Translations under genes and position numbers: made by a program
NCBI RefSeq assembly: GCF_032444005.1
Contig: NC_091282.1
Location: 661,974,001-662,038,000, forward strand
Source: Ranitomeya imitator
Lineage: Eukaryota
Direction: 5' to 3'
DNA: 64,000 nt
The notes under the pieces: model-generated
Database searches by the model: none
The model's input: the letters and a program-made list of their open reading frames with translations, nothing else
What the model was told of the DNA's origin: nothing
Shown here: in pieces, positions 32,401-58,900 of the stretch
How the letters are laid out: each line of letters opens with the position of its first letter
Numbering within the stretch: position 1 is the first letter of the stretch

Positions 32401-35400
32401 GGGACAGAGAGAGAAAGCAGGGGGCTGTGCGGAGGGGACAGTGAGAGAGAAACCAGGGGGCTGTGTGGAGGGGACAGAGAGAGAAAGCAGGGGGCTGTGC
32501 GGAGGGGACAGTGAGAGAGAAAGCAGGGGGCTGTGCGGAGGGGACAGTGAGAGAGAAAGCAGGGGGCTGTGTGGAGGGGACAGTGAGAGAGAAAGCAGGG
32601 GGCTGTGCGGAGGGGACAGTGAGAGAGAAAGCAGGGGGCTGTGCGGAGGGGACAGTGAGAGAGAAAGCAGGGGGCTGTGCGGAGGGGACAGTGAGAGAAA
32701 GCAGGGGGCTGTGTGGAGGGGACAGTGAGAGAAAGCAGGGGGCTGTGCGGAGGGGACAGTGAGAGAGAAAGCAGGGGGCTGTGCGGAGGGGACAGTGAGA
32801 GAGAAACCAGGGGGCTGTGCGGAGGGGACAGTGAGAGAGAAAGCAGGGGGCTGTGCGGAGGGGACAGTGCGAGCGAAACCAGGGGGCTGTGCGGAGGGGA
32901 CAGTGAGAGAGAAAGCAGGGGGCTGTGCGGAGGGGACAGTGAGAGCGAAACCAGGGGGCTGTGTGGAGGGGACAATGAGAGAGAAAGCAGGGGGCTGTGC
33001 GGAGGGGACAGTGAGAGAGAAAGCAGGGGGCTGTGCGGAGGGGACAGTGAGAGAGAAAGCAGGGGGCTGTGCGGAGGGGACAGTGAGAGAAAGCAGGGGG
33101 CTGTGCGGAGGGGACAGAGAGAGAAAGCAGGGGCTGTGCGGAGGGGACAGAGAGAGAAAGCAGGGGGCTGTGCGGAGGGGACAGTGAGAGAGAAAGCAGG
33201 GGGTTGTGCGGAGGGGACAGTGAGAGAGAAACCAGAGGGCTGTGTGGAGGGGACAGTGAGAGAGAAAGCAGGGGGCTGTGTGGAGGGGACAGTGAGAGAG
33301 AAAGCAGGGGGCTGTGTGGAGGGGACAGTGAGAGAGAAAGCAGGGGGCTGTGTGGAGGGGACAGAAAGAGAAAGCAGGGGGCTGTGCGGAGGGGACAGTG
33401 AGAGAGAAAGCAGGGGGTTGTGCGGAGGGGACAGAGAGAGAAAGCAGGGGGCTGTGCGGAGGGGACAGTGAGAGAGAAAGCAGGGGGTTGTGCGGAGGGG
33501 ACAGAGAGAGAAAGCAGGGGGCTGTGCGGAGGGGACAGTGAGAGAGAAACCAGAGGGCTGTGTGGAGGGGACAGAGAGAGAAAGCAGGGGGCTGTGCGGA
33601 GGGGACAGTGAGAGAGAAAGCAGGGGGCTGTGCGGAGGGGACAGTGAGAGAGAAAGCAGGGGGCTGTACGGAGGGGACAGTGAGAGAGCAGGGGGCTGTG
33701 CGGAGGGGACAGAGTGAGAAAGCAGGGGGCTGTGCGGAGGGGACAGTGAGAGAAAGGAGGGGACTGCGGAGGGGACAGTGAGAGAGAAAGCAGGGGGCTG
33801 TGCGGAGGGGACAGTGAGAGAGAAAGCAGGGGGCTGTGCGGAGGGGACAGTGAGAGAGAAAGCGGGGCTGTGCGGAGGGGACAGTGAGAGAGAAAGCAGG
33901 GGGCTGTGCGGAGGGGACAGAGAGAGAAAGCAGGGGGCTGTGCGGAGGGCCCGGGACAGTGAGAGAAAGCAGGGGGCTGTGCGGAGGGGACAGTGAGAGA
34001 GAAAGCAGGGGACTGCGGATGGGACAGAGAGCAGGGGGCTGTGCGGAGGACAGAAAGAGAGCAGGGGGATGTGAAAGAAGACAGTGAGTGAGCAGAAGGC
34101 TCTGCGGGGGAATAGCGAGCGAGCAGGGGGCTCTGCGGGGAACAGCAAGCAAATGGGGCTCTGTGGAGGAAAAGCAAGCAAGCAGGGGGGCATGCGGGGG
34201 GAACAGTGACTGAGCAGGGGGCTGTGTGTGGGAACAGTGGGAGAGGGAGCTTGGGGCTGTACAGGGGAAGAGCGAGCAGGGGGCTGTCTGTGGGAACAGT
34301 GGGAGATGGAGCCGTGCAGGAGGACACTTGATGAGCAGGGGGCTGTGGGAACAGTAGGAGAGGGAGCTTGGAACTGTGCAGGGGGGGGGGGGGACTGGGT
34401 GAGTGAGCAAAGGGTTGACAAAGTGTTTGAGAGAGCGGGGTGTGTCAGAGGGCAGTGGGCAATCGAGCAGGGAGCTGCATGGGAAGGGATGGCGAGTGAA
34501 CAGGGGAGCCACATAGAGGGGACAATGAATGAGTATGGGTCACCTGGCTGCACTGATGTCGAGCTGTTAGCAGGATTCCGGATTACTGGCAGGTCACTGT
34601 ATTATTTAACCCTTTGCTCTCTTCAGCTGTTCGTCCTCATGTTCATCTTTGTGAAGAGACAGATCATGCGATTTGCGATGAAGTCTCGTCGAGGCCCCCA
34701 CGTGCCTGTAGGACATAATGCACCCAAGGTAAACACTCTAAATGTTGCGGTCAGTTGGATGTGCTCACCTATCTTCTCTCCTTCTCATCCCCTCTCCCAT
34801 CGCCTCTCTCCTCCACGTTTTCCAGTGGGGAATGCACAATTCCTTTTTTGCAGTGATGTTGCTCCCCTCTTTATTCCAGTGATGTTGCTCCTCTGCTTCT
34901 TCCAGTGGTGTTGCTCCCATTTTTTCCTGAGTGGGGTGTGCTCCCTTTCTCCAGTTGTGGGCCCTCCCGACTAATCTCTCTGCCATGTTTCTTCTCTTTT
35001 ACTGCAGGACCTGCGGGAGGAAATTGATAACCGTCTCTCTAAGGTGCAGGACATAAGGTTTGAGCCACAACTCCTGGCGGAGGGGGACGAGCGGATGCTA
35101 CAGCTGGGCTCTCCAGGTGAGGATGGGTGCCACAACCACCACCACCATGTTGGGCATCTTCTTCTCCCATCGGGTTTTCCCGTAACTCTTCGTGTCTGTG
35201 TCTTCCAGGCGGCTACAACTACCTTTACAGGATGAAGACACTGGATGCTGTGAAAGAGTCAGGTAATTGCCCTCCTAGCGATTAGAGAGAAGCAGCTCCA
35301 TACAGCCCTGAGCCGTGGTGTCAGGACTCCGGGTCGCACTCTTGAAGGGCTGTTAAAGTGTATCAGAGCTAGGTGAGAGATGTGCCATAGTCGTGATTGC

Positions 35401-37549: not shown

Positions 37550-40130
37550 AGAGGGCAGTATTATAGAAGTTATATTCTTGTATATATGAGCAGTATTATA
37601 GTAGTTATATTCTTGGACACAGGGGCAGTATTATAATAGTTATATTCTTGTACATATGAGCAGTATTATAGTAGTTATATTCTTGTGCATAGGGGGCAGT
37701 ATTATAGTAGTTATATTCTTGTACATATGAGCAGTATTATAGTAGTTATATTCTTGGACACAGGAGCAGTATTATAGTAGTTATATTCTTAGACATAGGA
37801 GCAGTATTATAGTAGTTATATTCTTGTACATAAGGGGCAGTATTATAGTAGTTATATTCTTGTACATAAGGGCAGTATTATACTAGATATATTCTTGAAC
37901 ATAGGAGCAGTATTATAGTAGTTATATTCTTGTACATATGGGGCAGTATTATAGGAGTAGTATTATAGTAGTTATATTCTTGTACATATGAGCAGTATTA
38001 TAGAAGTTGTATTCTTGTACATAGGGGCAGTATTATAGTAGTTATACTCTTGTACATAAGGGGCAGTATTATAGTAGTTATATTCTTGTACATAAGGGGC
38101 AGTATTATACTAGATATATTCTTAAACATAGCAGTATTATAGTAGTTATATTCTTGTACATATGGAGCAGTATTATAGTAGTTATATTCTTGTACATAGG
38201 GGGCAGTATTATAGTAGTTATATTCTTGTACATAGGGGCAGTATTATACTAGATATATTCTTGAACATAGGAGCAGTATTATAGTAACGCAAAAGAGGGG
38301 AGAAGCCAGCGCAGCCTAAGGTTAAGACGCAATACATAAAATGCAAATGCACATATTAATTTCTAACTGTATTTTCAAAATGAGACATTTAGCAAACAAT
38401 TGATCAATTCTTTGAGCCACCCCGCCTCTTCACGGCAATCTCATATTGGGGCAGTCGTACACTACGTTTTTTATATTCGCTGTGCCATAAAGTCCTCCTA
38501 AGTGAACTAAAAGCAAGACCACATTAAAAGCATGCTGTACCTGGAGCATTACTGAGTCACCCCCATGGCGCCAGAGTAGGCAAGCGAGGATAAAGGTTGA
38601 CCAGGTCCAGACAGACATTTCAGATCCAACCTCCACACTGCCCATCCAGAACCACAGATAAAGAGTGAGACAGGCTGAGACACAGGTGCATAATTAAACA
38701 AAGCCGGAGGCAGGGCAGGGCTGCTGTGTGTGTGTACAGCAGCCTATCAATCACTGAGACACAGAAAGAATGGCGCACATAACCCGGCGCGGCGCACGGC
38801 AACAGTGGTGGTCAGCCACTTACCAATAACAGAGCAAAAAAGGGGAGAAGCCAGCGCAGCCTAAGGTTAAGACGCAATACATAAAATGCAAATGCACATA
38901 TTAATTTCTAACTGTATTTTCAAAATGAGACATTTAGCAAACAATTGATCAATTCTTTGAGCCACCCCGCCTCTTCACGGCATTCTCATATTGGGGCAGT
39001 CCTACACTACGTTTTTTATATTCGCTGTGCCATAAAGGCCTCCTAAATGAACTAAAAGCAAGACCACATTAAATGCAAGCTTAGTATTATAGTAGTTATA
39101 TTCTTGTACATAGGAGCAGTAGTATAGTAATTATGTTCTTGTACACGGGGGAAGTATTATAGTAGTTATCCAAAATAGAGAAAAAAGCAGCAACACGCCA
39201 TTTACCGTGTCATAAAAATCTAAGTCCTTTATTTAAGAAAGCTTTTCATGGACAAGGTTTTTGATGGCAGGACGAATACAGGTATGCAGGCAAAAGAACA
39301 GGACTATGGCCGTTTCGCGTTTAACGTGTCCAGATGGTATATTCTTGTACATAGGAGCAGTATTATAGTAGTTATATTCTTGTGCATAGGAGCAGTATTA
39401 TAGTAATTATATTCTTGTGCATAGGAGCAGTATTATAGTAGTTATATTCTTGTGCATAGGAGCAGTATTATAGTAGTTATATTCTTGTGCATAGGGGGCA
39501 GTATTATAGTAGTTATATTCTTGTACATAGGAGCAGTATTATAGTAGTTATATTCTTGTGCATAGGAGCAGTATTATAGTAGTTATATTCTTGTGCATAG
39601 GAGCAGTATTATAGTAGTTATATTCTTGTGCATAGGGGGCAGTATTATAGTAGTTATATTCTTGTACATAGGAGCAGTATTATAGTAGTTATATTCTTGT
39701 GCATAGGAGCAGTATTATAGTAGTTATATTCTTGTGCATAGGGGGCAGTATTATAGTAGTTATATTCTTGTACATAGGAGCAGTATTATAGTAGTTATAT
39801 TCTTGTGCATAGGGGGCAGTATTATAGTAGTTATATTCTTGTACATAGGGGCAGTATTATAGTAGTTATATTCTTGTGCATAGGGGGCAGTATTATAGTA
39901 GTTATATTCTTGTACATAGGGGCAGTATTATAGTAGTTATATTCTTGTACATAGGAGCAGTATTATAGTAGTTATATTCTTGTACATAGGGGACAGTATT
40001 ATAGTAGTTATATTCTTGTGCATAGGGGGCAGTATTATAGTAGTTATATTCTTGTACATAGGGGCAGTATTATAGTAATTATATTCCTGAACATAGGGGG
40101 CAGTGTTATAATAGTTATATTCTTGTACGT
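37550..40130. repeat. ~32-bp AT-rich satellite interrupted by two insertions
   Basis: gcagtattatagtagttatattcttgtacataggg repeats; non-satellite inserts at ~38286-39080 and ~39170-39338. Confidence 0.95.
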
Positions 40131-42879
40131 ATGACCGGTATTGTTTTTATATATATAATGATTCACTGACACAGTGTATGAAGGGAGATAGGTGTCACTG
40201 CATATACTACAGTCAGTGATGTAGAACCAGATCATTTTTGCCTCCAGCATGCTAAGTACTGAGAGGGTTAATTTTAAAGTTACAATGGGCTGGTTTTATG
40301 TGAGCATGCATAGAGTGGGAGGGAGGGTGCTCACCGTATTCCCTCTTGCGGCATGTGTACTAGCAGGACCTGCAGTGATGTCACGATCATGTGATCATCA
40401 CATGGTCCTGGTTAGATACCTGGACATGAGGGACAGTCTGTGTGGTGTGTTGTGAGAGGGAACACTCTTACTTGGCTCCAGGAGGAGCGGAGGACATTGC
40501 CAGGTGTCTGCAGGTGGAACCTGCAGAGAAAGGACCCTGTGGCACTTTGTTTGTTTTGTTTTCTGTTAAGCCAGGAAGGTTCTGCTTCTGTTTTCCTGAA
40601 CCCTGCCTTGGTCTATGCTGACTTTAACCCCTTAGTGACCACCAATACGTCTTTTTACTGACCGGTCATATAAGAAAGTAGCATTCCCCAACGGGTGACG
40701 ATCTTATATCTCTCAGCTGTACACTATAGCTGACAACTTGCTGCATCATGCATTATCAGTGTTGGTACCGACAATAGTCGCTTCATCCCTTAAATGCTGC
40801 TGTCAATCACTACAACATCTAGATGGTTAACAGTGTGGGGGCTCCCTCTTTAACCCCTTAGTGACAGAGATAATTTGGTACTTAATGACCGAGCCAATTT
40901 TTATAATTCTGACCACTGTCACTTTATGAGGTTATAACTCTGGAACGCTTCAACGGATCCCGCTGATTCTGAGATTGTTTTTTCGTAACATATTGTACTT
41001 CATGTTAGTGGTAACATTTCTTCGATATTACTTGCGATTATTTATGAAAAAAACGGAAATATGGCGAAAATTTTTAAAATTTTGCATTTTTCAAACTTTG
41101 TATTTTTATGCCCTTAAATCAGAGAGATGTGTCACGAAAAATAGTTAATAAATAACATTTCCCACATTTCTGCTTTACATCAGCACAATTTTGGAAACAA
41201 CATTTTTTTTGTCAGGGAGTTAGAAGGGTTAAAAGTTGACCAGCAATTTCTCATTTTTACAACACCTTTTTTTTTTAGGGACCACATCACATTTGAAGTC
41301 ATTTTGAGGGGTCTATATGATAGAAAATAACGAAGTGTGACACCATTCTAAAAACTGCACCCCTCAAGGTTCTCAAAACCACATTCAAGAAGTTTATTAA
41401 CCCTTTACGTGCTTCACAGGAACTGAAACAATGTGGAAGGAAAAAATTAACATTTAACTTTTTTTTGCAAACATTTTAATTCAGAACCATTTTTTTTATT
41501 TTCACAAGTGTAAAAACAGAAATGTAACCATAAATTTTGTTATGCAATTTCTCCTGAATACGCCAATACCCCATATGTGGGGGTAAACCACTGTTTGGGC
41601 GCACCGCAGAACTTGGAAGTGAAGGAGCGCCGTTTCAATGCAGAATTGGCTGGAATTGAGATCGGACGCCATGTCACGTTTAGAGAGCCCCTGATGTGCC
41701 TAAACAGTAGAAACCCCCCACAAGTGACCCCATTTTGTAAACTAGGCCCCTTAAGGAACTTATCTAGATGTGTGGTGAGCACTTTTAACCCCCAAGAGCT
41801 TCACAGAAGTTTATAACGTAGAGCCGTGAAAATAAAAAATCGTATTTGTTTACACAAAAATGATCTTTTCACCCACAAATTCTTATTTTTACAAGGGTAA
41901 CAGGAGAAATTAGACCACAAAAGTTGTTGTGCGATTTCTCCTGAATACGTCGATACCCCATATGTGAGGGTACACCTCTGTTTGGGCGCACCGCAGAGCT
42001 TGGAAGTGAAGGAGCGCCGTTTTACTTTTTCAATGTAGAATTGGCAGGAATTGAGATCGGACGCCATGTCGCCTTTGGAGAGCCCCTGATGTGCCTAAAC
42101 AGTGGAAACCCCCCACAAGTGACCCTATTTTGGAAACTAGACCCCCCATGGAACTTATCTAGATGTGTGGTGAGGACTTTGAATGCCCAAGTGCTTCACA
42201 GAAGTTTATAATGCAGAGTCGTGAAAATAAAAAAAGATTTTTTTTTCCACAAAAAAGATTTTTTTAGCCCCCAAGTTTTTATTTTCACAAGGGTAACAAG
42301 AGAAATCAGACCCCAAAAGTTGTTGTCCAATTTGTCCTGAGTATGCTGGTACCCCATATGTGGGGATAACCACTGTTTAGGCGCACGGCAGAGCTCGGAA
42401 GGAAGGAGCGCCGTTTTGGAATGCAGACTTTGATAGAATGGTCTGCGGGCGTTATGTTGCGTTTGCCGAGCCCCTGATGTACCTAAACAGTAGAAACCCT
42501 CCACAAGTGACCCCATTTTGGAAACTAGACCCCCCAAGGAACTTATCTAGATGTGTGGTGAGAACTTTGAATGCCCAAGTGCTTCACCAAAGTTTAGAAT
42601 GCAGAGTCGTGAAAATAAAATCATTTTTTTTCCACAAAAAAGATTTTGTGGCCCCCAAGTTTTTATTTTCACAAGGGTAACAGGAGAAATTGGACCACTA
42701 AAGTTGTTGTCCAATTTATCCCGAGTACGCTGATGCCCCATATGTGGGGGTAAACCACTGTTTGGGCGCACGGCAGAGCTCAGAAGGGAGGGAGCACCAT
42801 TTGACTTTTTGAGCGCAAAATTGGCTGTCCTGTTTGGAGACCCCCTGATGTACCTAAACAGTGGAAACCCCCCAATTCT

Positions 42880-43830
42880 AGCTCCAACCCTAACCCCAAC
42901 ACACCCCTAACCCTAATCCCAACCCGATCCATAATCCTAATCACTAACCCTAACGATAATCACAACCCTTACCCCAAAACAACCCTAATGTCAACCCTAA
43001 CCATAACCCTAATCAAAACCCTAAATCCAACACACCCCTAATCCTAATCTCAACCCTAACCTCAAACCTAACCCTAATCCCAATACACCCCTAATCACAA
43101 CCCTAACCTTAACCCTAATCCCAAACCTAACCCTAATCCCAAGCGTAACCCTAATGCCAACCCTAATCCTAATACCAACCCTAATCGAAACCCTAACCCT
43201 AATCCCAACTCTAACCCTAACTTTAGCCCTAACTTTAGCCCCAACCCTAACCCTAAGGCTACTTTCACACTTGCATCGTTTGGCATCCGTCGCAATCCGT
43301 CGTTTTGGACAAGAAACGGATCCTGCAAATGTGCCCGCAGGATGCGTTTTTTGCCCATAGACTTGTATTGCCGACGGATCGTGACGGATGGCCACACGTC
43401 GCGTCCGTCGTGCACTGGATCAGTTGTGTTTTGGTGGACCGTCGGCACAAAAAAACATTCAATGAAACGTTTTTTTTGTACGTCGCATCCGCAAATTTCT
43501 GACCGCGCATGCGTGGCCGTAACTCCGCCCCCTCCTCCCCAGGCCATAGATTGGGCAGGGGTTGCGTGAAAAACTACATCCGCTGCCCACGTTGTGCACA
43601 ATTTTCACAACGTGCGTCGGTATGTCGGGCCGATGCATTGCGACGGCCCTGTACCGACGTAAGTGTGAAAGAAGCCTAACCCTAAATTTAGCCCCAACCC
43701 TAACCCTAAATTTAGCCCCAACCCTAACCCTAAATTTAGCCCCAACCCTAACCCTAAATTTAGCCCCAACCCTAACCCTGAATTTAGCCCCAACCCTAAA
43801 TTTAGCCCGAACCCTAACCCTAACCCTAGC
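42880..43830. repeat. Interstitial telomere-like array (degenerate CCCTAA, with a 24-bp ccctaaccctaaatttagccccaa variant)
   Basis: Directly visible; split by a MITE at 43257-43676. Confidence 0.9.
43257..43676. mobile_element. Harbinger-like MITE inserted into the telomere-like array
   Basis: GGCTACTTTCACACTTGC...GTAAGTGTGAAAGAAGCC with TAA duplication. Confidence 0.85.
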
Positions 43831-46318: not shown

Positions 46319-48425
46319 ACCACAAGTTGCAAATTTTTTGCCAGTTTTGTAAAATTTCTGATATTTTTATAAATAAACGCAGAAAATAATGACAAATTTA
46401 CCATTATCATAAAGTACAATATGTCAGGAAAAAAGTGTCAAAATCAATGGGATATGTTTAACCCCTTTACCCTCGAAGTGGTTTGCACGTTAATGACCGG
46501 GCCAATTTTTACAATTCTGACCACTGTCCCTTTATGAGGTTATAACTCTGGAACGCTTCAATGGATCCCAGTGATTCTGACATTGTTTTCTCGTGACATA
46601 TTGTAGTTCATGATAGCGGTAAAATTTCTTTGATATGACTTGCGTTTATTTGTGAACAAAAATGGAAATTTGGCGAAAATGTGGAAAATTTCGCAATTTT
46701 CCAACTTTGAATTTTCATGCTCCTAAATCATAGAGATGTGTCACACAAATCCTTTATAAATAACATTTCCCACATGTTTCCTTTACATCAGCACAATTTT
46801 GAAACCAAAATGTTTTTTTGTTAGGAAGTTATAAGGGTTAAAAGTTGACCAGCAATTTCTCATTTTTACAACACCACTTTTTTTTAGGGACCACATCACA
46901 TTTGAAGTCACTTTGAGGGGTCTATATGATAGAAAATAACCAAGTGTGACACCATTCTAAATACTGCACCCCTCAAGGTGCTCAAAACCACATTCAAGAA
47001 GTATATTAACCTTAAGGTGCTTCACAGGAATTTTTGGAATGTTTAAAAAAAAGAATGTAACGCCCAAGAGACCGGGGTACCCAGCACCGGACCAATGGGG
47101 TCTGTCTCTTGAGGGGGGTGTCACGGGTGGCTTGACCCGGTGCTGTGGCCTCAGGCAATGCACAGTGTAAAGGGTATCGTGAGGGAACAGGCACTTACTT
47201 GATCAGCAGCAGGTTCTCCCAGCGGTGATGATCCCAATCCTGGATAGATGGCTATTGTCCAAATGAAAGACTGAGGCACTGAAACGTTTAACCAGTTTAC
47301 TTTAACAAAAAAGGATTTACAACCAGTCCTGTCACCGGAGTCTGTAGGGAACTCTGAGTTACTTTTACCCTGCCGGGGTCTTCGCCTCTTATTGTACGCA
47401 ATATCTGTGTGGCCCTGCTGCTGTATGTGAACTGGCTGCCGGCCCAATCTGTCCCCTCCGGGTCCTGGTTCGACGGGCAACCCGAGTCCTTTTATCGGCT
47501 TACCCCCTCCAGGAGTACCGCTGAACTCTGTGTCTGTTGCTGCGTCCGACCCTAGTGAAGCTGATATCACCTCACATTTTTCCGGTTGCTGTATTATATG
47601 TAATGAATACAGCCACGGATCCGGTATCCGTCTTTGCGCCTGTTCTGGGTAGTGATTAATGCTACCCAGTTCTCACAATGTCCTTTTTCTCTATCCCTCT
47701 TCTCCTCAGGCCGGTGATTTAGGCCTGGTAACAGTCACAGGGCTGTTAGAGATTCAACTGTATGACCTCTCACTTTCAGCTCCTTAGCCCAACTGCCAGT
47801 TCTTCTCTCAGACCAGAATGGATCAAGGGGAGTCTCTGGAGCTCCCCCTTCTGGCCGGAGGTGGTAGTGCAGTCTTGCTATTTTAGTATTTGCATTTACT
47901 GTCAGTAACTATTTTTGTGGCAAATACCCCTAGGGGTGCCACATTCCCCCTTAGTTAAGAACAGTACTCCGGGACTGTGGGACAATAACATTTTGAAATA
48001 ACAATTAATATGTACAGAGTCTTAAAAATGAAAAGTTACAAAAACCACTCAAGGAAACAAAAATATAGTTCTGTAAAAAGTCACTTCAAATAGCGTCCAT
48101 TAATACAGTTCTATCCTTGAAGGTATTAGGAAAGGCACTGTACTTAGTGTCCAGGAATTTAGTTCCATTTTTCCAACGGAGTTATCAATATAAAGTCTAA
48201 AGAAAGTTCAAAAAGAGCAAAAAGCAAAGTTCAAAAAGCAGTCTTTCCGGAGCTTTGATTTAGTGCCTCCGGGCTGATAAAAAGTTCAAGAATATGCAAG
48301 AAGTTCATACAGACAAGTCTCTGTAGGCACTGGGCTTAAACGTTGCAGACTGATAACAATGACTATACTACATTTTCTGTTTAACTATAGACGGCATAAC
48401 ATATATACAATTCACATTATGAGCT

Positions 48426-51400
48426 TTATAGTTGGTAATCTGCATACCTGGCCGGTAATTGACCCTGGGTACTACGCTGTGATCTACGTAATAGCGGTGT
48501 CTCTTCATGTGGTGTACTACTGTCTACTGCGGATGTAGTATCTGCCCGCTCTGCTAAAGATAATTCCACGACTATGGAGTTGGCAAGTCCACCGTGAATG
48601 GGATTACTCTGACCAGGAATCTGTTCTTCCTGGCCTGGAACCTCCTGTAGTACGGGGCCAGCCTCTTCCTGTCTTGGGACTTCTGGTATTGGGTTCGGTG
48701 TTGGGTAAAAGGCCACCATGGGAACCACTACTGCACCATGGTATGTTAGTAGGGTTTTGGGAAAGTCTCCTATACAGCTGTGATACACTTCCTCTTCTTT
48801 TTCCTTTACTGGTTGAACCTGTATGGGTTGAATAACTTCTGGTTCTGGCTGGACAACGTCTGGCTCTTTCAATGCTTCCGGACATAATTTAAGATTGTCT
48901 CTTGACACTAGTACAGATGTTAAGCCTCCGTTTTTGCTAATGAGACACATTTTAGGATTATCCACTCTTGTTGGTAAAACTGTGTAGGGTACGGCTTCCC
49001 ACTGATTGTCCAGTTTATTGGTTCGACGATTTCTCTTGAGCACTTGGTCACCCGGTCTTAATGGGGTCGCTAGAGCATTCTGGTTGAAAGTTCGCTCTTG
49101 TCTTTCTCTAGTTTGCTGAAGGCTTCTTTCCACACTCTCTTGCACTTGGCGATACTGCTTTTGCCGTATCATATCCCAATTGGAGTCTTGGACTTCTGCG
49201 TCTGGTTTCAGAATTCCCATTTCTAGATCGATTGGTAATTGGCCGGGTCTTGCACGCATAAGGTAAGCTGGGGTGCAATTGGTGGAACTCACCGGGACAT
49301 GATTATACAGATCCACCAAGTCAGGCAATTTCTCTGGCCATTGATTCCTTTCTGCCTCAGGTAAAGTCTTTAGTAGTTCTATTACAATATGGTTCATCTT
49401 CTCGCATAAGCCGTTTGTTTGTGGATGATAGGCCGTCGTCCGGATCTTTTTGCAACCATACATATTACAGAATTCTCTGAAGATCTCTGATTCAAAGGCT
49501 GTACCTTGGTCGGTGAGAACCTGTTCCGGATATCCATGGGGTCTACAAAAGTACGTTTGGAATGCTTTGGCTGCTGTTTTTGCTGTCAGATCTTTTACGG
49601 GTACTACTACCAAGAAGCGTGAATAATGGTCCACGATGGTCAAGGCATAGACATAGCCAGACCGGCTTGGTGTCAACTTCACGTGGTCAATGGCTACAAG
49701 TTCAAGTGGTTGAAAAAATGTTGCAGTAATCCGATCATCTGTATATAACCTGTGTGAACCGTTTTTTACATCTTTTACTAGCACTTGCGGATTACTGCAA
49801 CATTTTTTCAAACTGAGTGTTTTTGGTTTTACTATTCTCTTTTGTGTCTTCAGGTTTCTTGGTGGTGTGTGAACATGATCATACAGACTTGTTCACTGTG
49901 CAAGTAGCCCATGTGTTCCTGTTTCCATAATTGTTCTCTTGTGTCTACAAGACTGGGGAGTTCCACCACTCCTCTTGGGCTATCTGCACAAAAGCTGTTC
50001 TACCCTGTATGCACACATGGATTTTTCCTCTCTGAACCCTGTTCACACAGGTTATATACAGATGATCAGGTTTTTAAATACATCAGATAGGGATTGCATA
50101 CATTAGTTAGGACTGCTCTGATAAGGGTATACCGTGAAGATTGGTAGAGCAGCTTAGTATACATTTTTTGCAAAAAACGTATCAACCAAATACCCTGTTT
50201 TTTACATCTTTTACTAGCACTTGCGGATTACTGCAACATTTTTTCAAACTGAGTGTTTTTGGTTTTACTATTCTCTTTTGTGTCTTCAGGTTTCTTGGTG
50301 GTGTGTGAACATGATCATACAGACTTGTTCACTGTGCAAGTAGCCCATGTGTTCCTGTTTCCATAATTGTTCTCTTGTGTCTACAAGACTGGGGAGTTCC
50401 ACCACTCCTCTTGGGCTATCTGCACAAAAGCTGTTCTACCCTGTATGCACACATGGATTTTTCCTCTCTGAACCCTGTTCACACAGGTTATATACAGATG
50501 ATCAGGTTTTTAAATACATCAGATAGGGATTGCATACATTAGTTAGGACTGCTCTGATAAGGGTATACCGTGAAGATTGGTAGAGCAGCTTAGTATACAT
50601 TTTTTGCAAAAAACGTATCAACCAAATACCCTGTTTTTTACATCTTTTACTAGCACTTGCGGATTACTGCAACATTTTTTCAAACTGAGTGTTTTTGGTT
50701 TTACTATTCTCTTTTGTGTCTTCAGGTTTCTTGGTGGTGTGTGAACATGATCATACAGACTTGTTCACTGTGCAAGTAGCCCATGTGTTCCTGTTTCCAT
50801 AATTGTTCTCTTGTGTCTACAAGACTGGGGAGTTCCACCACTCCTCTTGGGCTATCTGCACAAAAGCTGTTCTACCCTGTATGCACACATGGATTTTTCC
50901 TCTCTGAACCCTGTTCACACAGGTTATATACAGATGATCAGGTTTTTAAATACATCAGATAGGGATTGCATACATTAGTTAGGACTGCTCTGATAAGGGT
51001 ATACCGTGAAGATTGGTAGAGCAGCTTAGTATACATTTTTTGCAAAAAACGTATCAACCAAATACCCTGTTTTTTACATCTTTTACTAGCACTTGCGGAT
51101 TACTACAACATTTTTTCAAACTGAGTGTTTTTGGTTTTACTATTCTCTTTTGTGTCTTCAGGTTTCTTGGTGGTGTGTGAACATGATCATACAGACTTGT
51201 TCACTGTGCAAGTAGCCCATGTGTTCCTGTTTCCATAATTGTTCTCTTGTGTCTACAAGACTGGGGAGTTCCACCACTCCTCTTGGGCTATCTGCACAAA
51301 AGCTGTTCTACCCTGTATGCACACATGGATTTTTCCTCTCTGAACCCTGTTCACACAGGTTATATACAGATGATCAGGTTTTTAAATACATCAGATAGGG

Positions 51401-54400
51401 ATTGCATACATTAGTTAGGACTGCTCTGATAAGGGTATACCGTGAAGATTGGTAGAGCAGCTTAGTATACATTTTTTGCAAAAAACGTATCAACCAAATA
51501 CCCTGTTTTTTACATCTTTTACTAGCACTTGCGGATTACTGCAACATTTTTTCAAACTGAGTGTTTTTGGTTTTACTATTCTCTTTTGTGTCTTCAGGTT
51601 TCTTGGTGGTGTGTGAACATGATCATACAGACTTGTTCACTGTGCAAGTAGCCCATGTGTTCCTGTTTCCATAATTGTTCTCTTGTGTCTACAAGACTGG
51701 GGAGTTCCACCACTCCTCTTGGGCTATCTGCACAAAAGCTGTTCTACCCTGTATGCACACATGGATTTTTCCTCTCTGAACCCTGTTCACACAGGTTATA
51801 TACAGATGATCAGGTTTTTAAATACATCAGATAGGGATTGCATACATTAGTTAGGACTGCTCTGATAAGGGTATACCGTGAAGATTGGTAGAGCAGCTTA
51901 GTATACATTTTTTGCAAAAAACGTATCAACCAAATACCCTGTTTTTTACATCTTTTACTAGCACTTGCGGATTACTGCAACATTTTTTCAAACTGAGTGT
52001 TTTTGGTTTTACTATTCTCTTTTGTGTCTTCAAGTTCAAGTGGTTGTTTGGTGATTATGGGCTGCAGTGGTGCTCTTTGGTTCTTTTGATCGTTTCTTCT
52101 GAGGTTGCATGGGCCACAATTTCTGCACCACTGTTCGATTGATTTTCTCATCCCGACCCAATAAAATCTTTCTCTTAGAAGTACTTCTAACTTTTTCCAA
52201 CCGAAGTGACCAGCACCATTATGGTAAGCTTCGAGGACCATCTTGACATCTTGTTTAGGCACGATAATCTGCCAAACCAATTCATGTGTTTTCGGATTGG
52301 TGTACCTTCTACAGAGCTTCCCTTGATACAGGAACATTTTGCCTCTCTCTTTCCAGAGTTGATGCGTCTCTTCTGGGGCATCCTCATCGGGATATGCACT
52401 TTGCTCAGTTAACAATTCCTTCACCAACTTCACAGCCGGATTGCTGTCTTGGGTGTCAGCCCATCTATGGTGTGCTAACGGATTTAAATTCACCTCTTGT
52501 TGTTTCTGATAGGTACTTGACTGATGATGTTTTGCCTTGGGATGATGGAAGGCTGGTAGTTCAATTTCTTCAAGCTCCCCCATTTCTTCTTCTACATCTC
52601 TCAAGTGTGGCATCCGGGATAGGGCATCGGCATTTCCATTCTTGCGACCTGCTCGATACTTGATCTTGAAGTTGTAATTAGATAACCGGGCTATCCATCG
52701 CTGTTCTAACGCACCTAATTTGGCTGTGTCCAGGTGGGTCAACGGATTGTTGTCAGTATAGACAATAAATTCTGCAGCGGCCAGATAGTGTTTGAAACGT
52801 TCAGTCACAGCCCAAACTACTGCCAGTAGTTCCAATTTGAAGGAGCTGTAATTTTCTGAATTTCTTTCAGTAGGCCGGAGCTTTCTACTTGCAAAGGCGA
52901 TGACTTTCTCCCGACCTTCTTGCTTTTGTGACAGCACCGCTCCTAGTCCCACATTACTGGCATCGGTGTAGAGGATGAAAGGTTGATGGTAATCTGGGTA
53001 TGCCAGAACCTCTTCTCCGGTTAGTGCCTTCTTTAGTTGTTCAAAGGAGTCTTCCCTTTTGTCGTTCCACTGAAAAGGAGGGTTTCGGTTTGAAGGTTTC
53101 TTCGTCTGCCCTACCAAGGTGTCTTGCAAGGGTGCTGCCAACTTGGTAAATCCTTTTATAAATCTGCGATAGTAACCCACCAATCCCAGGAATTGTCTCA
53201 CTTCTTTTGCGCTGGTAGGTCTTGGCCAATCCCTTATGGCGCTTATTTTCTCGGGATCTGGTGCTACTCCCTCCGAACTCACGATGTGTCCCAGGTACTG
53301 TACCTTTGGCTTGAGAAGGTGACATTTGGATGGCTTGACTTTCATGCCATACCTGGATAAGGCTTCGAACACTTCTGCCAGGTCTATTAAGTGTTGTTCG
53401 TAAGTCTTTGAGTAGACGATCACATCATCTAGGTACAGGAGGACGGTCTCGAAGTTCTTGTGTCCGAGGCAGCATTCCATCAGCCGCTGGAAGGTACCGG
53501 ATGCGTTGCAGAGTCCGAACGGCATGCGATTAAATTCACATAGACCCATTGGTGTGGTGAATGCCGTCTTTTCCTTATCTCGCTCAGCCACAGGGACTTA
53601 CCAATACCCGCTTGTTAAGTCTAAGGTGGAAAAATAAATAGCAGATTTCAAAGCAGTTAAGGACTCTTCTATCCTAGGCAAGGGGTAGGTGTCTTTATGG
53701 GTGATGTTATTAATCTTCCGGTAGTCTACGCACATTCTCATGGTTCCGTCCTTTTTTTTGACAATCACTAGAGGGGCCGCCCAGGGGCTACAGCTGTCTC
53801 TTATTACCCCGGCCTGTTTCATCTCCCTCAGCATATCTTTTGCACATTGATAGTGAGCGGGCGGTATGGGTCTATATCTTTCTTTTATTGGGGGATGGTC
53901 ACTGGTGGGGATTGTGTGTTCTACCCCTTCTATCCGTCCGAAGTCCAATGGGTGTTTACTGAAGACTTGTTCATATTCCGTCACTAGCCTATACACCCCT
54001 TGTTTTTGATGGGTAGGTGTTGAATTTATGCCCACGTGTAGCTGTTGGCACCAATCCTCCATTTCTCCATCTGAGCCATTGCCTTCCACCTGACAGGTTG
54101 GTTCTAAGGGCTCAATGGTTGTGATGGCATTGTTGTCAACAGTATATAGCTTTGCCATTGTAGCATACCTTGGCAAAGTAACCTCTTCCTCTCCACAGTT
54201 CAAAAGTCGTACCGGCACTCGTCCCCGGTGTACCTCGACTATCCCTCGTGCTGTGAGTATAGTGGGCCTGCTGTCGGTGTACACTGGTTCTATTAAGGCT
54301 TGATAATCTCGTCCCTTAGTACCAATGGCTGCTCTACACCATACCAGCATTTCTGTTTTTGGTGGGATTACAATAGACGTTGGATCACTTACCCTCACAC

Positions 54401-54896
54401 TGCCGATTTCTCCACCTGCAACTTCTACCTGTTGCCTTAACATCAATACTTTTATTTCCCTCCGGAGAACTCTCTGCTGGCAGGATTGGGCAGTTTCAGC
54501 AATTTGCTGTAAGACAGAAATGACTTCGGAAAAGCAGTTCTCTAACACATTCATTCCTATCAATACAGTTGGTTCACAGTTCCGCCGGTCAACATCAACA
54601 ACAATTATACCCTGTTTCTTCAATTCTACTTTACCAATCTTTATGGTCATCTCCCTGAATCCTAGTTTCGGTACCAACTTACCATTACTGGCCCATATAT
54701 CTAGTTCAACATCAGAGGGCCCTTTATCAATATCTGCATCAGCCCAGTACCTCTTATAAAGGATATACGGTATAGATGAAATCTGGGAACCTGTGTCCAG
54801 CAAAGCGTTGAGGGGCATTCCGTCCAGCACGATAGGGATAATGGGTCGTCCTCCGATGTACCTGTCGTGCCAGGGTGTTGGGCCTTGAAAGTTCAT
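48426..54896 (-). pseudogene. pol: Gypsy pol (PR-RT-RNaseH-integrase), disrupted by one TAA (53598-53600) and the 49713-52030 insertion
   Basis: Protease LLDTGS, RT CVDYRKIN...YPLP...LDLTSGYW*VPV...YLDD, RNase H LYTDAS...YTDNNPL, integrase HHCC (HNGAGH...CRNCGPC) and core VAIDHV...TDQG...GLCEKMN. One frame throughout once the insertion is removed. Confidence 0.93.
49761..52030. repeat. 5.2 near-identical head-to-tail copies of a 436-bp unit
   Basis: tcttttactagcacttgc recurs at 49771, 50207, 50643, 51079, 51515 and 51951. Confidence 0.97.
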
Positions 54897-55933
54897 TCCT
54901 GCGAAGCGGCCCGCATTCCCAGGGGATTCCCGTTTAAATCACAATCTCGTGCAAAGTGGCCTGGCTGCTGGCAACGGCGGCAAATGGGCTGTCCATCCGG
55001 TTGGTAGCGGTCGCGGGGTCGTCCTCTCCATGTCGGGTATCTCCGGGGTCTCATCCATGGAACACCTTCTCTACGGTTTGACAACTCCATCTTGGGTCCT
55101 CTCATCTCCTGCATGGTTTTAGCCATTGAAGCAACAACATCAGTTAAAGAGTCAAGCTTTTGTTGAAGAGCCTCATTAGTACTGGGCCCCAGGGGCTTAG
55201 CAATGGCCCCGGACATAGCTGATGTCACTGGTACTCCATGTTGTTGAGGAGCCTTTGCCATGAGTTGCGCAGGATCCTGATCCCGAGGTGCCTCTGCCAG
55301 CTGGAGACGTATAACGCTCTCCTTTAATTGGGCAAATGTCAATTCAGGGTTCTTAAAAACAAGCATGCTCACATGCCCCCGGTGAGAAGGGGTGTAGAGT
55401 CCCTCAATAAATTGATCTCTTAGCAGTTTATCCGCTCCGGTGTTAAAAATGGGTTCAGCCAGTGTAAGTGATTTAAGGGCTTCCTGCAGGTTTAAGGCAA
55501 AGTCTCTCACGCCCTCATTAACTTTTTGTTTGCAATTAAAGAATCGTACTTTAGCTTTGCTGCTGGCAGTGGTTTCAAATGTAGCTTTTAATCCAGCAAA
55601 TATGCGTTCAACAGTGCCTTTTAGATCAGCTGCCCACGCTGTGACTTCTCGCTTAGCATGGCCACTTAACTGCATCATCAGGAGACTAACACGCTGAACT
55701 TCACCCACAGGGAACATGTCAAAATGGGCCAGCATCTTTTCTCTGAAATCATCAAGGGTATTAGGCTCACCTTCATACATTGGAAGCCATGGGCCACCCG
55801 GGGTATATGGCATCAGCACCGGCATGATGGGCGCCACTCCTTGCACCGCTGCGCTACCGGACTCTCTATCGACACTCTGTCTTTCAGCTGCATTAGCGTC
55901 GCCGGGTGCTGCGGCGTCTCCGTGCTGCGACAT
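54893..55933 (-). CDS. gag: Gypsy Gag, 346 aa, with CCHC zinc knuckle
   Basis: Intact ORF after the PBS; LRDQFIEGL motif and CRRCQQPGHFARDC. Confidence 0.9.
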   Translation of the reverse strand: MSQHGDAAAPGDANAAERQSVDRESGSAAVQGVAPIMPVLMPYTPGGPWLPMYEGEPNTLDDFREKMLAHFDMFPVGEVQRVSLLMMQLSGHAKREVTAWAADLKGTVERIFAGLKATFETTASSKAKVRFFNCKQKVNEGVRDFALNLQEALKSLTLAEPIFNTGADKLLRDQFIEGLYTPSHRGHVSMLVFKNPELTFAQLKESVIRLQLAEAPRDQDPAQLMAKAPQQHGVPVTSAMSGAIAKPLGPSTNEALQQKLDSLTDVVASMAKTMQEMRGPKMELSNRREGVPWMRPRRYPTWRGRPRDRYQPDGQPICRRCQQPGHFARDCDLNGNPLGMRAASQE

Positions 55934-58900
55934 ACTGTGCCCCCTTAGTTAATCCGGACCCTTCCGGTCCTCCGCTTCCGTCGGGATAGTGTAGATTCGT
56001 TCCGCTGTGCTGCAGGATCGATTTTCCCCTTGCTCTGATGTCAGAGCGCTCAGCTTGGTGCCGCCCACAATGACACGCCCCCTGCTGCTCCCACCCACCG
56101 CGCTCTATAATGGCGGATTCTGAAGTTTTTCAGTTAGACTGGGGCTCAGGTGATGGCGTAGCTCAATTAACAGTCTCGTGCCTAACGGTTATGAAGTGAT
56201 TACCTCAGGGGATGGCGGCCATCTTTACTCCATTATAACCAATGGGGAAAAGTCACTTTCAATAGTTTTCAATGGGGAATGGATTTTTCTTTAATAAAGT
56301 CAATTTTCAAGATTTTTCATCCAAGTTTTCACAGTTTTGGGCTCCAATCACGGCACACAATACCCGGTATACAGGCTGGCTAGATCCTGTTCGTGACGCC
56401 AATTGTAACGCCCAAGAGACCGGGGTACCCAGCACCAGACCAATGGGGTCTGTCTCTTGAGGGGGGTGTCACGGGTGGCTTGACCCGGTGCTGTGGCCTC
56501 AGGCAATGCACAGTGTAAAGGGTATCGTGAGGGAACAGGCACTTACTTGATCAGCAGCAGGTTCTCCCAGCGGTGATGATCCCAATCCTGGATAGATGGC
56601 TATTGTCCAAATGAAAGACTGAGGCACTGAAACGTTTAACCAGTTTACTTTAACAAAAAAGGATTTACAACCAGTCCTGTCACCGGAGTCTGTATGGGAA
56701 CTCTGAGTTACTTTTACCCTGCCGGGGTCTTCGCCTCTTATTGTACGCAATTTCTGTGTGGCCCTGCTGCTGTATGTGAACTGGCTGCCGGCCCAATCTG
56801 TCCCCTCCGGGTCCTGGTTCGACGGGCAACCCGAGTCCTTTTATCGGCTTACCCCCTCCAGGAGTACCGCTGAACTCTGTGTCTGTTGCTGCGTCCGACC
56901 CTAGTGAAGCTGATATCACCTCACATTTTTCCGGTTGCTGTATTATATGTAATGAATACAGCCACGGATCCGGTATCCGTCTTTGCGCCTGTTCTGGGTA
57001 GTGATTAATGCTACCCGGTTCTCACAATGTCCTTTTTCTCTATCCCTCTTCTCCTCAGGCCGGTGATTTAGGCCTGGTAACAGTCACAGGGCTGTTAGAG
57101 ATTCAACTGTATGACCTCTCACTTTCAGCTCCTTAGCCCAACTGCCAGTTCTTCTCTCAGACCAGAATGGATCGAGGGGAGTCTCTGGAGCTCCCCCTTC
57201 TGGCCAGAGGTGGTAGTGCAGTCTTGCTATTTTAGTATTTGCATTTACTGTCAGTAACTATTTTTGTGGCAAATACCCCTAGGGGTGCCACAAGAACATT
57301 TAACTTTTTTCACAAAAAATTCAGTTCAGATCCAATTTGTTTTATTTTACCAAGGGTAACAGGAGAAGTTGGACCCCAAAAGTTGTTGTACAATTTTTCC
57401 TGAGTACGCTGATGCCCCATATGTGGGGGTAAACCACTGTTTGGGCGCATGGCAGAGCTCGGAAGGAAAGGAGCGCCATTTGACTTTTCAATGCAAAATT
57501 GGCTGGAATTGAAATAGGACGCCATGTCGTGTTTGGAGAGCTACTGATGTGCCTAAACAGTGGAAACCCCCCACAATTGACCCCATTTTGGAAACTAGAC
57601 CCTCTAAGGTACCTATCTAGATGTGTGATGAGCACTTTGAACCCCCAAGTGCTTCACTAAAGTTTATAATGTAGAGCCATGAAAATAAAAAAAATCATTT
57701 TTTTCCCACAAAAATGATCTTTTAGCCCGCAATTTTTTATTTTCCCAAGGGTAACAAGAGAAATTGGACCCCATATGTGGGGGTAAACCCCTGTTTGGGC
57801 GCACGACAGAGCTTGGAAGGGAAGGAGCACCGTTATACTTTTTCAACACAGAATTGGCTGGAATTGAGATCGGACGCCATATCGTGTTTGGAGAGCCCTG
57901 ATTTGCCTAAACAGTGGAAACCCCCCCAATTCTAACTGAAACCCTAATCCAAACACACCCCTAACCCTAATCCCAACCCTAACCACACCCCTAACCCCAA
58001 CACACCCCTAACCCCAACACACCCCTAATCCCAACCGTAAACGTAATCCATCCCTAACCCTAACTTTAGCCCTAACCCTAATGGGAAAATGGAAATATAT
58101 TTAAAAAAATTATTTTATTATTTTTCCCTAACCAAGGGGGGTTTGATTTACTATTTATAGCGGGTTTTTATGTTTGGCAGCTGTCACACGCTAAAAGACG
58201 CTTTTCATTGCAAAAAATAGTTTTTGCGTCACCACATTTTGAGAGCTATAATTTTTCCATATTCTGGCCCACAGAGTCATGTGAGGTCTTGTTTATTGCG
58301 GGACGAGTGTGACGTTTTGATTGGTACCATTTTTGGGCACATGACATTTTTTGATCGCTTTTTATTCCGATTTTTGTGAGGCAGAATGAACAAAAACCAG
58401 CAATTCATGAATTTTTTTTTTTTTTTTTTTGGGGGGGGGGGGATTTATACCGTTCCACGTTTGGTAAAATTGATAAAGCAGTTTTATTTTTTGGTTCAGT
58501 ATGATTACAGCGATACCTCATTTTTCTTTTTTTTAAGTTTTGTAGCTTTTATGCAATAAAAACTTTTATATAAAAAAATAATTCTTTTGCATCGCTTTAT
58601 TCTGAGGGCTATAAATTTTTTTATTTTTCTGGTGATGGAGTTATATGGCTGCTTGTTTTTTGCGGGACAAGATGACGTTTTCAGCGGTACCATGTTTATT
58701 TATAGTTGTCTTTTGATCGCGTGTTATTCCACTTTTTGTTCGGTGGTATGATGATAAAACATTGTTTTTTTGCCTTTTTTTTAATGGTGTTCACTAAAGG
58801 GGTTAACTAGTGGGACAGTTTTCTAGGTCGGGTCGTTACGGACGCGGCGATACTAAATATGCTGGCAACACTGTGTGAGAAAATTCTCACGCAGTATTGC

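What the first reader, a model, noticed from the sequence alone, without database searches (positions are those of the whole stretch)
49697..52046. 436-bp x 5.2 array with an inverted cap and a 16-bp target-site duplication inside a Gypsy integrase: candidate rolling-circle or retrozyme-like retro-insertion
Seen in sequence: CAAGTTCAAGTGGTTG occurs at 49697-49712 and 52031-52046, and deleting the insert plus one copy restores ITKQPLELVAIDH in frame. The insert is two short inverted pieces of the unit (49713-49733 = reverse complement of 49788-49808; 49734-49759 = reverse complement of 50041-50066) followed by 5.2 almost identical units; I saw one variant base, near 51105. The unit has no ORF, has a T-rich junction end and is self-complementary (TGTGTGAACA/TGTTCACACA, CCATGTGT/ACACATGG, CTGCTCT/AGAGCAG, ATACATTTTTT-GC-AAAAAACGTAT). 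Established: long TSDs, 5' inversions and tandem copies mark target-primed reverse transcription by Penelope-like and non-LTR elements, and metazoan retrozymes are tandem arrays of circular-RNA monomers. Inference: a structured ~436-nt circular or multimeric RNA was reverse-transcribed several times round and inserted in one recent event. I see no canonical hammerhead core, so any self-processing motif would be non-standard.
Basis: partly seen in the sequence, partly recalled or inferred. Interest (0 to 1): 0.78.

Follow-up and report, generated by a model that had tools for sequence, protein, structure and literature searches.

The report
Tandem frog retroelement with pseudoknot domain
A very young 2.3-kb block of five identical copies of a 436-base non-coding repeat was pasted in one event into a frog Gypsy element, most likely by reverse transcription in the style of Penelope-like retrotransposons; it has no hammerhead ribozyme, but each copy carries a conserved folded RNA domain shaped like a hepatitis-delta-type ribozyme.

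Summary
The insert lies between the zinc-finger and core domains of a Gypsy integrase.

The best reading is a single target-primed reverse-transcription event of a non-autonomous, tandem-forming retroelement. The layout is that known for Penelope-like elements (PLEs). An RNA circle is neither shown nor needed.

The scan has already noted this repeat family at other loci of the same poison-frog genome (s1-279618, s1-312567, s1-288107, s1-288126, s1-288119). Those notes called it ribozyme-free. I could not re-check those loci.

New here:
- Each unit holds an 84-nt domain (u353-u436) that recurs in an otherwise dissimilar 545-bp-unit insertion in this window (38289-39081, minus strand).
- Seven base pairs keep pairing through changes on both sides.
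- The topology is that of an HDV-like double pseudoknot (P1, P1.1, P2, P3, P4).
- Both insertions end 90-93 nt downstream of the domain.
- The direct array starts at the first base after the domain.

Against a ribozyme: no Rfam match, C-G instead of the G.U wobble at the predicted cut, and no test of cleavage.

There is no hammerhead.

The parts
49697..49712 (.). left copy of the 16-bp target-site duplication
   Evidence: identical to 52031-52046; only two copies in the window
49713..49733 (-). inverted cap piece 1, reverse complement of unit positions 28-48 (match runs 3 nt further into the duplication)
49734..49759 (-). inverted cap piece 2, reverse complement of unit positions 281-306; followed by one orphan C at 49760
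49761..52030 (+). direct array, 5 full units of 436 bp plus 90 bp; one variant (G>A) at 51105
52031..52046 (.). right copy of the target-site duplication; first 6 nt match the continuing unit at 5 of 6 positions
50549..50632 (+). conserved pseudoknot-capable domain (unit positions 353-436). P1 50549-55/50582-88; P2 50560-66/50626-32; P3 50567-69/50579-81; L3 50570-78; P1.1 50574-75/50589-90; P4 50595-50618. Same domain in every unit at 50113-50196, 50985-51068, 51421-51504, 51857-51940
47056..57292 (-). host Gypsy (Ty3) element: LTRs 47056-47943 and 56404-57292, gag, protease-RT-RNaseH-integrase; also carries an in-frame stop at 53598-53600
38289..39081 (-). second, older non-coding insertion of a related family: 1.45 copies of a 545-bp unit (248-nt repeat, 297-nt middle, 248-nt repeat), 12-bp duplication inside a 35-bp satellite; carries the same domain at 38925-38999 and 38380-38454

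Best explanation
This is one young insertion of a non-autonomous, non-coding retroelement that spreads as head-to-tail multimers. A sense (+ strand) RNA holding several 436-nt units was copied into DNA at a staggered break 16 bp wide. Synthesis was primed from the nicked bottom strand at the right end, helped by a short match between target and RNA. First-strand synthesis ran through five units and stopped at the first base after a folded domain. The other target end (...GGTTG-3') primed on the same sense RNA through a 3-nt match, copied 21 nt, jumped about 158 nt upstream, copied 26 nt, added one C and was joined to the first strand. That gives the small inverted cap. The enzyme comes from elsewhere, most likely a Penelope-like element, less likely a LINE. 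Each unit carries an 84-nt conserved domain with the topology of an HDV-like ribozyme. I infer that this domain is the functional core of the family. It would either bind the reverse transcriptase and set the 3' start point about 90 nt downstream, or cut the RNA. Shown: the anatomy, the junction matches, and the conservation and covariation of the domain. Inferred: the RNA intermediate, the order of steps, the enzyme, and any catalysis.
For: The 16-bp duplication and the single reading frame across the flanks show one clean insertion. The ends have no terminal inverted repeats, no poly(A) and no ORF. The cap pieces are templated by the + strand and start from a 3-nt match with the target 3' end. 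The right junction matches at 5 of 6 positions. Partial or multiple tandems with an adjacent inverted 5'-truncated copy are the published signature of PLE insertions. Non-autonomous PLE derivatives that give multicopy head-to-tail insertions without a hammerhead are described (PMC8557442). Animal non-LTR retrozymes are tandem repeats related to PLE pseudo-LTRs, with duplications longer than 4 bp. A covariance model built from the 436 unit alone finds only the two copies of the 545-bp unit elsewhere in 64 kb (E 3.8e-6 and 1.4e-4). In that alignment 96.5% of cells pair, against 36-55% when partners are slid, and 7 pairs change on both sides. RNAalifold recovers P1, P3 and P4 by itself. Two G.U pairs in P1 of the 545 unit work only on this strand, so the helix is kept at RNA level in the sense orientation. 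P2 is 7 bp and 6 bp of Watson-Crick pairing (p 0.018 and 0.045). Both insertions end 90-93 nt after the domain. The insertion is young: 1 difference in 2,270 bp, inside an element whose LTRs differ at 5 sites plus 1 indel in 888 bp.
Against: The mobility of the family therefore rests on this window's two insertions and on unchecked scan notes. No Penelope-like reverse transcriptase or matching 3' end was seen. The cap is only 47 nt, far shorter than the inverted copies typical of PLEs, and there is no 30-40-bp tail. The covariation rests on two lineages only and on an alignment fitted to the structure. The domain alone is not unusually stable (z about 0).
Confidence: 0.7

Rival explanations
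1. One reading: a 436-nt monomer RNA circle, made by self-cleavage and ligation, was reverse-transcribed several times round (rolling circle), and the multimeric cDNA was inserted.
For: All five unit junctions are identical with no added bases. The right junction lies inside the unit with a 5-of-6 match, as expected for priming on a circle by annealing. A delta-shaped domain could supply the cut, leaving ends that a tRNA-type ligase can join, as shown for retrozymes.
Against: A second insertion of a related family ends at the same distance (90-93 nt) from the domain, which points to a set 3' end rather than a free choice of start on a circle. The predicted cut (5' of P1) coincides with neither end of the insert. 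Cleavage and circles are untested. The fold of the whole unit is only mildly better than shuffles (z -2.6), unlike rod-like circular RNAs.
Confidence: 0.17
2. Same retro-insertion, but the enzyme is a LINE (CR1, L2, RTE or R2-like) rather than a Penelope-like element. HDV-like ribozymes are known from LINEs, not from PLEs.
For: HDV-like ribozymes sit at the 5' ends of R2, RTE, L1Tc and their short non-autonomous derivatives. Inversions at the 5' end by twin priming, and duplications of 7-20 bp, are classic for LINE insertion (established knowledge of L1). Scan notes report young CR1 in this genome (unchecked).
Against: Head-to-tail multimers as the normal insertion product are a PLE trait. There is no poly(A) or microsatellite tail. 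The first nick is not at a TTTT/A-type site (sequence). [quoted passage not shown]
Confidence: 0.22
3. DNA-level event: an extrachromosomal circle or rolling-circle replication product of a 436-bp satellite was captured at a staggered double-strand break. Polymerase-theta end joining made the short templated inverted pieces.
For: Microhomologies of 1-5 nt lie at every junction, there are short templated insertions in inverted orientation, and there is one orphan base. All of these are typical of theta-mediated joining (established knowledge).
Against: A clean 16-bp duplication needs a 16-nt stagger, which random breaks seldom give. The inverted pieces are copied from the + strand near the left end of the insert, the strand that resection would remove from an incoming duplex. 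A second family with the same conserved RNA-level domain also sits between a 12-bp duplication and ends at the same distance from the domain.
Confidence: 0.08
4. The insertion is real, but the copy number or the perfect identity of the units is an assembly or polishing artefact.
For: Five letter-perfect 436-bp units are the kind of stretch that assemblers can collapse, expand or homogenise. No reads could be laid on it.
Against: 2.3 kb is well within a single long read. One unit keeps a private variant (51105). Both junctions are unique sequence.
Confidence: 0.07

Closest known systems
Animal non-LTR retrozymes (Cervera and de la Pena 2020, PMC7229834; Li, Clavereau and Pollet 2026 preprint, 10.64898/2026.07.22.740005)
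   Same: Non-coding, AT-rich tandem units of a few hundred bp. They are dispersed as short arrays (most families up to about 7 units), have duplications longer than 4 bp, are present in all sampled amphibians, and are thought to ride on Penelope-like elements.
   Different: Their defining type I hammerhead is absent here. A delta-shaped domain stands in each unit instead. Circular RNA is not shown.
Non-autonomous Penelope-like elements, e.g. MRC1 and other Chlamys derivatives of Chlamydomonas (Craig et al. 2021, PMC8557442)
   Same: [quoted passage not shown]
   Different: Those are algal, and are tied to their partners by shared 3' ends. Here the partner is unknown, the host is a vertebrate whose canonical PLEs all carry hammerheads, and the inverted copy is only 47 nt.
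HDV-like ribozymes of retrotransposons (R2, RTE, L1Tc/NARTc; Eickbush 2010, Ruminski 2011, Sanchez-Luque 2011, PMC3185411)
   Same: Order of strands P1-P2-P3-P3'-P1'-P4-P4'-P2'. P1 of 7 bp, P3 of 3 bp abutting P1, a possible 2-bp P1.1, and a C followed by N-A-A in the strand before P2'. It resides in a mobile element and its short derivatives.
   Different: C-G instead of the G.U wobble at the cut. L3 is purine-rich (GUGAAGA), not C-rich. P1.1 is drawn from positions 5-6 of L3. It is repeated once per tandem unit and lies about 90 nt from the 3' end, not at the 5' end of an element. No Rfam hit and no assay.
L1 twin priming (Ostertag and Kazazian 2001; recalled, not read here)
   Same: An inverted segment at the 5' end, primed by the second target end on the same RNA, with a small overlap between the inverted and direct parts. 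The duplication is 16 bp.
   Different: No poly(A), no TTTT/A nick site, a tandem product, and an extra internal jump within the inverted part.

Membership tests
Animal non-LTR retrozyme | type I hammerhead ribozyme in each tandem unit | tested here: not met
   Rfam at E up to 10 over more than 3 units, both strands: none. Own cyclic descriptors: no core with at most 1 mismatch, including forms without helix III; 2-mismatch hits at shuffle level.
Animal non-LTR retrozyme | non-coding tandem units of about 50-970 bp, low GC, duplications longer than 4 bp | tested here: met
   436 bp x 5.2, GC 0.39, longest ORF 59 aa, 16-bp duplication; ranges.
Animal non-LTR retrozyme | expressed as linear and circular monomer RNA | not testable with these tools
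Penelope-like-element-type insertion (non-autonomous) | partial or multiple head-to-tail tandem with 5' truncation | tested here: met
   5.2 units here and 1.45 units in the 545-bp family; feature as described.
Penelope-like-element-type insertion (non-autonomous) | inverted 5'-truncated copy directly at the 5' end | tested here: inconclusive
   Present, but only 21 + 26 nt and in two non-adjacent pieces. It could equally be twin priming by another enzyme.
Penelope-like-element-type insertion (non-autonomous) | 3' end shared with an autonomous PLE of the same genome | not testable with these tools
Penelope-like-element-type insertion (non-autonomous) | 30-40-bp tail extension at one end | tested here: not met
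   No extra segment between array and duplication at either end, apart from the cap.
HDV-like self-cleaving ribozyme | nested double pseudoknot: P1, P2, P3 (3 bp), P4, P1.1 (1-2 bp) | tested here: met
   All five can be drawn in the 436 unit and in both 545-unit copies. Generalised descriptor: 1 hit per unit at the same place, 4 of 300 shuffles. P1, P3 and P4 supported by covariation. P2 p 0.018 and 0.045. The descriptor was written after seeing the 436 fold.
HDV-like self-cleaving ribozyme | G.U wobble closing P1 at the cleavage site | tested here: not met
   The first P1 pair is C-G in all copies.
HDV-like self-cleaving ribozyme | catalytic C in the strand joining P4 to P2 | tested here: inconclusive
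   A C followed by N-A-A precedes P2' in both families (alignment), but spacing to P2' differs by 3 nt and nothing shows that it is catalytic.
HDV-like self-cleaving ribozyme | match to curated models (HDV, CPEB3, drz families) | tested here: not met
   No Rfam match at E up to 10 in either family, nor at gathering level in the window.
HDV-like self-cleaving ribozyme | self-cleavage 5' of P1 | not testable with these tools
   Needs in vitro transcription of a dimer. Neither end of the insert lies at the predicted cut.
L1-type (poly(A)-dependent) retro-insertion | 3' poly(A) and a TTTT/A-type first nick | tested here: not met
   The insert ends in ...GTGTCTT. The bottom-strand nick site reads ACTTG/TAGCC.
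Cut-and-paste DNA transposon or Helitron | terminal inverted repeats with a fixed short duplication, or A/T insertion without duplication | tested here: not met
   No terminal inverted repeat at the right end; 16-bp duplication.

The most novel reading that the evidence does not exclude
The 436-bp and 545-bp repeats are 'delta-retrozymes': tandem, protein-free retroelements of frogs in which a divergent HDV-like ribozyme (C-G at the cut, purine-rich L3) replaces the hammerhead. It would cut multimeric transcripts into unit-length RNAs that are circularised or used directly as templates. That would be the first delta-type ribozyme found as the repeating core of a tandem retroelement, and a genomic source from which delta-like circular RNAs could arise.
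Probability: 0.2. Interest if true: 0.8.

Novelty: new variant of a known kind. Interest (0 to 1): 0.55.

Why it matters
Hammerhead retrozymes are so far the only known protein-free tandem retroelements of animals, and their ribozyme is what defines them. This family shows the same way of spreading without a hammerhead. It keeps a different folded domain under RNA-level constraint across two diverged families, at a fixed distance from the 3' end.

If the domain cleaves, ribozymes in such elements are interchangeable modules, as proposed for infectious circular RNAs. Delta-type ribozymes would then gain a new genomic niche.

If the domain does not cleave, it is a candidate recognition element for a Penelope-type reverse transcriptase, whose template rules are unknown.

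Either way the locus is a clean, dated natural record of how satellite-like arrays are seeded at new sites.

Tried and rejected
- Hammerhead: Rfam and two descriptors of my own, including forms without helix III, found nothing above chance. An exact CUGAAGA on the minus strand at the right junction has no helix II or GAAA and is taken as chance.
- First HDV descriptor: my first, strict version gave no hit, because it fixed P1.1 at L3 positions 2-3 and put P4 directly after P1.1. It was replaced by a looser one.
- Homology outside the domain: between the 436 and 545 units it is not significant; alignment scores fall below the shuffle mean. The apparent shared CTCTTTTG near both 3' ends is therefore not used as evidence.
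- mir-27 match: noise (E 6.5).
- Other copies in the window: none.
- Scan notes by sequence: blank, which means nothing here.
- Exact look-up of seven unit ORFs in the protein collection: none found.
Neither was retried. So there was no read support, no RNA evidence, no other loci and no empty-site copy of the host element.
- Scans of the bacterial, viral and metagenome collections were not run, because a frog repeat is not expected there.
- Minus-sense template: rejected. The cap would then need a chimeric RNA, and the domain's G.U pairs work only on the + strand.
- Complex prediction and structure tools: not relevant.
Full report
**Observation**

The finding is accurate. The 16-mer at 49697-49712 recurs at 52031-52046 and nowhere else in the window, and cannot be extended on either side. 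The insert between the two copies consists of:
- 21 nt that are the reverse complement of unit positions 28-48;
- 26 nt that are the reverse complement of unit positions 281-306;
- one orphan C;
- five complete 436-bp units plus 90 bp.

I number the unit from 49761 (u1). The only difference among units is G>A at 51105. No ORF in a unit exceeds 59 aa.

The flanks are the two halves of a Gypsy integrase on the minus strand. Pfam puts Integrase_H2C2 just before the break and the rve core from residue 2 after it. The frame phase fits a simple insertion with a 16-bp duplication. I searched the two protein pieces apart and sent no joined sequence to any tool.

**Host element and age**

The host is a complete Gypsy element at 47056-57292. 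Its LTRs are 888 and 889 bp long and differ by five substitutions and one indel. It has a 4-bp duplication (AGAA), and a further in-frame stop at 53598-53600.

I used the anuran rate range of 1-3 x 10^-9 per site per year quoted in PMC12822217. With it, the LTRs put the host insertion at roughly 1-3 million years. The array must be younger than that. It shows one change in 2,270 bp and identical duplications.

**Junctions**

- The inverted piece next to the left duplication matches the unit for three more bases (TTG) into the duplication.
- The two inverted pieces overlap by one base.
- At the right end the unit would continue CAGGTT where the target reads CAAGTT.

All inverted sequence is templated by the + strand of the unit and starts from the 3' end of the top target strand. 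This is what twin priming on a sense RNA predicts. The first strand is primed at the right nick. The second target end primes internally on the same RNA, copies 21 nt, skips about 158 nt upstream, copies 26 nt, and the two cDNAs are joined.

A DNA-level capture with polymerase-theta joining can also make such scars. It does not explain the clean 16-nt stagger, and it would need as template the strand that resection removes.

The ends have no terminal inverted repeats, no poly(A), and no TTTT/A-type nick site.

**What is known**

Penelope-like elements insert with heavy 5' truncation, as partial tandems, often with an inverted 5'-truncated copy at the 5' end. Non-autonomous derivatives without a canonical hammerhead that give multicopy head-to-tail insertions are described in Chlamydomonas (PMC8557442).

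Animal non-LTR retrozymes are tandem non-coding units carrying type I hammerheads. Their duplications are longer than 4 bp. They occur in all sampled amphibians and are related to Penelope pseudo-LTRs (PMC7229834; preprint 10.64898/2026.07.22.740005).

The present insert matches that style but lacks the hammerhead:
- Rfam at E up to 10 over more than three units on both strands gave only noise.
- My cyclic descriptors found no core with at most one mismatch, even without helix III.

**Earlier scan notes**

The genome is a poison frog. The scan has already noted arrays of 431-, 436-, 437- and about 500-525-bp units at other loci. Follow-ups read them as ribozyme-free Penelope-style insertions (s1-279618, s1-312567, s1-288107, s1-288126, s1-288119). 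One note proposes a delta-like fold in a 519-bp unit (s1-312544). I could not read those loci, so they remain leads.

**New result: a shared domain**

A weak BLAST hit of the unit led to a second non-coding insertion in this window, at 38289-39081 on the minus strand.
- It holds 1.45 copies of a 545-bp unit: a 248-nt repeat, a 297-nt middle part, and the 248-nt repeat again, the two repeats 97% alike.
- It lies between a 12-bp duplication inside a 35-bp satellite.
- The pattern GGACTGC, 10-22 bases, CCGTGAAG occurs only in the five 436-bp units and in this element, with zero expected by chance.

A covariance model built from the 436 unit alone (92 nt; helices P1, P3, P4) finds, in 64 kb on both strands, only the two copies in the 545-bp element beyond itself. 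The E-values are 3.8e-6 and 1.4e-4, with full-length alignments.

In that alignment:
- 96.5% of cells pair, against 36-55% when partners are slid by 1-3 columns.
- Seven pairs change on both sides and stay paired.
- Two pairs change on one side to G.U.
- RNAalifold recovers the three helices on its own.

The G.U pairs work only on this strand, so the constraint acts on a sense RNA.

Caveats: there are only two independent lineages, the alignment was fitted to the structure, and the domain alone is not unusually stable (z about 0). Similarity outside the domain is not significant.

**Shape of the domain**

In the second unit the pairings are:

| Element | Coordinates |
|---|---|
| P1 | 50549-55 with 50582-88 |
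| P2 | 50560-66 with 50626-32 |
| P3 | 50567-69 with 50579-81, abutting P1 |
| L3 | GUGAAGAUU |
| P1.1 | AG in L3 with the CU after P1 |
| P4 | 50595-50618, with one internal mismatch |
| P4-P2 joining strand | contains C-N-A-A before P2' |

This is the strand order of HDV-like ribozymes. The 545-bp unit allows the same drawing. P2 is seven and six Watson-Crick pairs (p 0.018 and 0.045 against shuffled tails).

A generalised descriptor hits once per unit at the same place in both families, and in 4 of 300 shuffled units. I wrote that descriptor after seeing the 436 fold. The independent part of the test is therefore the 545-bp unit.

Against a true delta ribozyme:
- The pair at the predicted cut is C-G, not G.U.
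- L3 is purine-rich.
- P2 is not in register between the families.
- No curated model matches.
- Upstream GG can pair with the CU of P1.1.
- Neither end of the insert lies at the predicted cut.

**Position of the domain**

Both insertions end 90-93 nt downstream of the domain. The direct array of the 436-bp insert begins at u1, the first base after the domain (u436).

The first fact suggests a template with a set 3' end, or a start point measured from the domain. The second fits a reverse transcriptase that stopped at the foot of a folded domain. Each is a single observation, and both were noticed after the fact.

**Verdict**

This is a real, very young, single-event retro-insertion of a non-autonomous tandem retroelement. 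It is of Penelope-like style and has no hammerhead. I put the overall reading at about 0.7, and Penelope rather than LINE as the partner at about 0.5.

The circular-RNA version is possible but has no support. The conserved delta-shaped domain is the point worth following up. I give it about 0.2 of being a self-cleaving ribozyme and rather more of being a protein-recognition element.

**Not done**

Noticed in passing
window 38289-39081 (minus strand): Older non-coding insertion of 1.45 copies of a 545-bp unit (248-nt repeat, 297-nt middle, 248-nt repeat; repeats 97% alike) between a 12-bp duplication (TACTATAATACT) inside a 35-bp satellite. It carries the same conserved domain as the 436-bp unit.
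   Followed up: yes
window 39165-39338: A further stretch of about 170 bp of unique sequence interrupts the same 35-bp satellite just beside the 545-bp element. Its nature is unknown.
   Followed up: no
window 53598-53600 (minus strand): The host Gypsy pol carries an in-frame stop inside the reverse-transcriptase domain (Pfam RVT_1 is split between the two ORFs). The copy was therefore already broken apart from the array insertion.
   Followed up: partly
window 12872-14269, 41493-42802, 57340-57896: Three arrays of one 395-bp tandem family, the first in opposite orientation. The second and third are each followed by degenerate telomere-like (CCCTAA)n tracts (42886-43256, 43675-43828, 57925-58064), suggesting a composite mobile unit.
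   Followed up: no
window 29660-34049: 4.4-kb array of a 36-bp purine-rich unit (about 125 copies) with extreme GC and AT skew. It creates spurious ORFs of up to 1,685 aa on the minus strand.
   Followed up: no
window 1-3186: 74-bp satellite, 43.5 copies, 93% matches, running off the left edge of the window.
   Followed up: no
window 21309-23921: A first-stage note (s1-271927) places SNORA58-like snoRNAs here. An Rfam scan of the whole window at gathering thresholds returned no family at all, so any such copies score below the curated cut-off. An assembly gap lies at 22977-23120.
   Followed up: partly
window 49863-49900 and the same place in each unit: A 38-nt hairpin in the unit resembles the mir-27 precursor only at noise level (14 bits, E 6.5).
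   Followed up: yes
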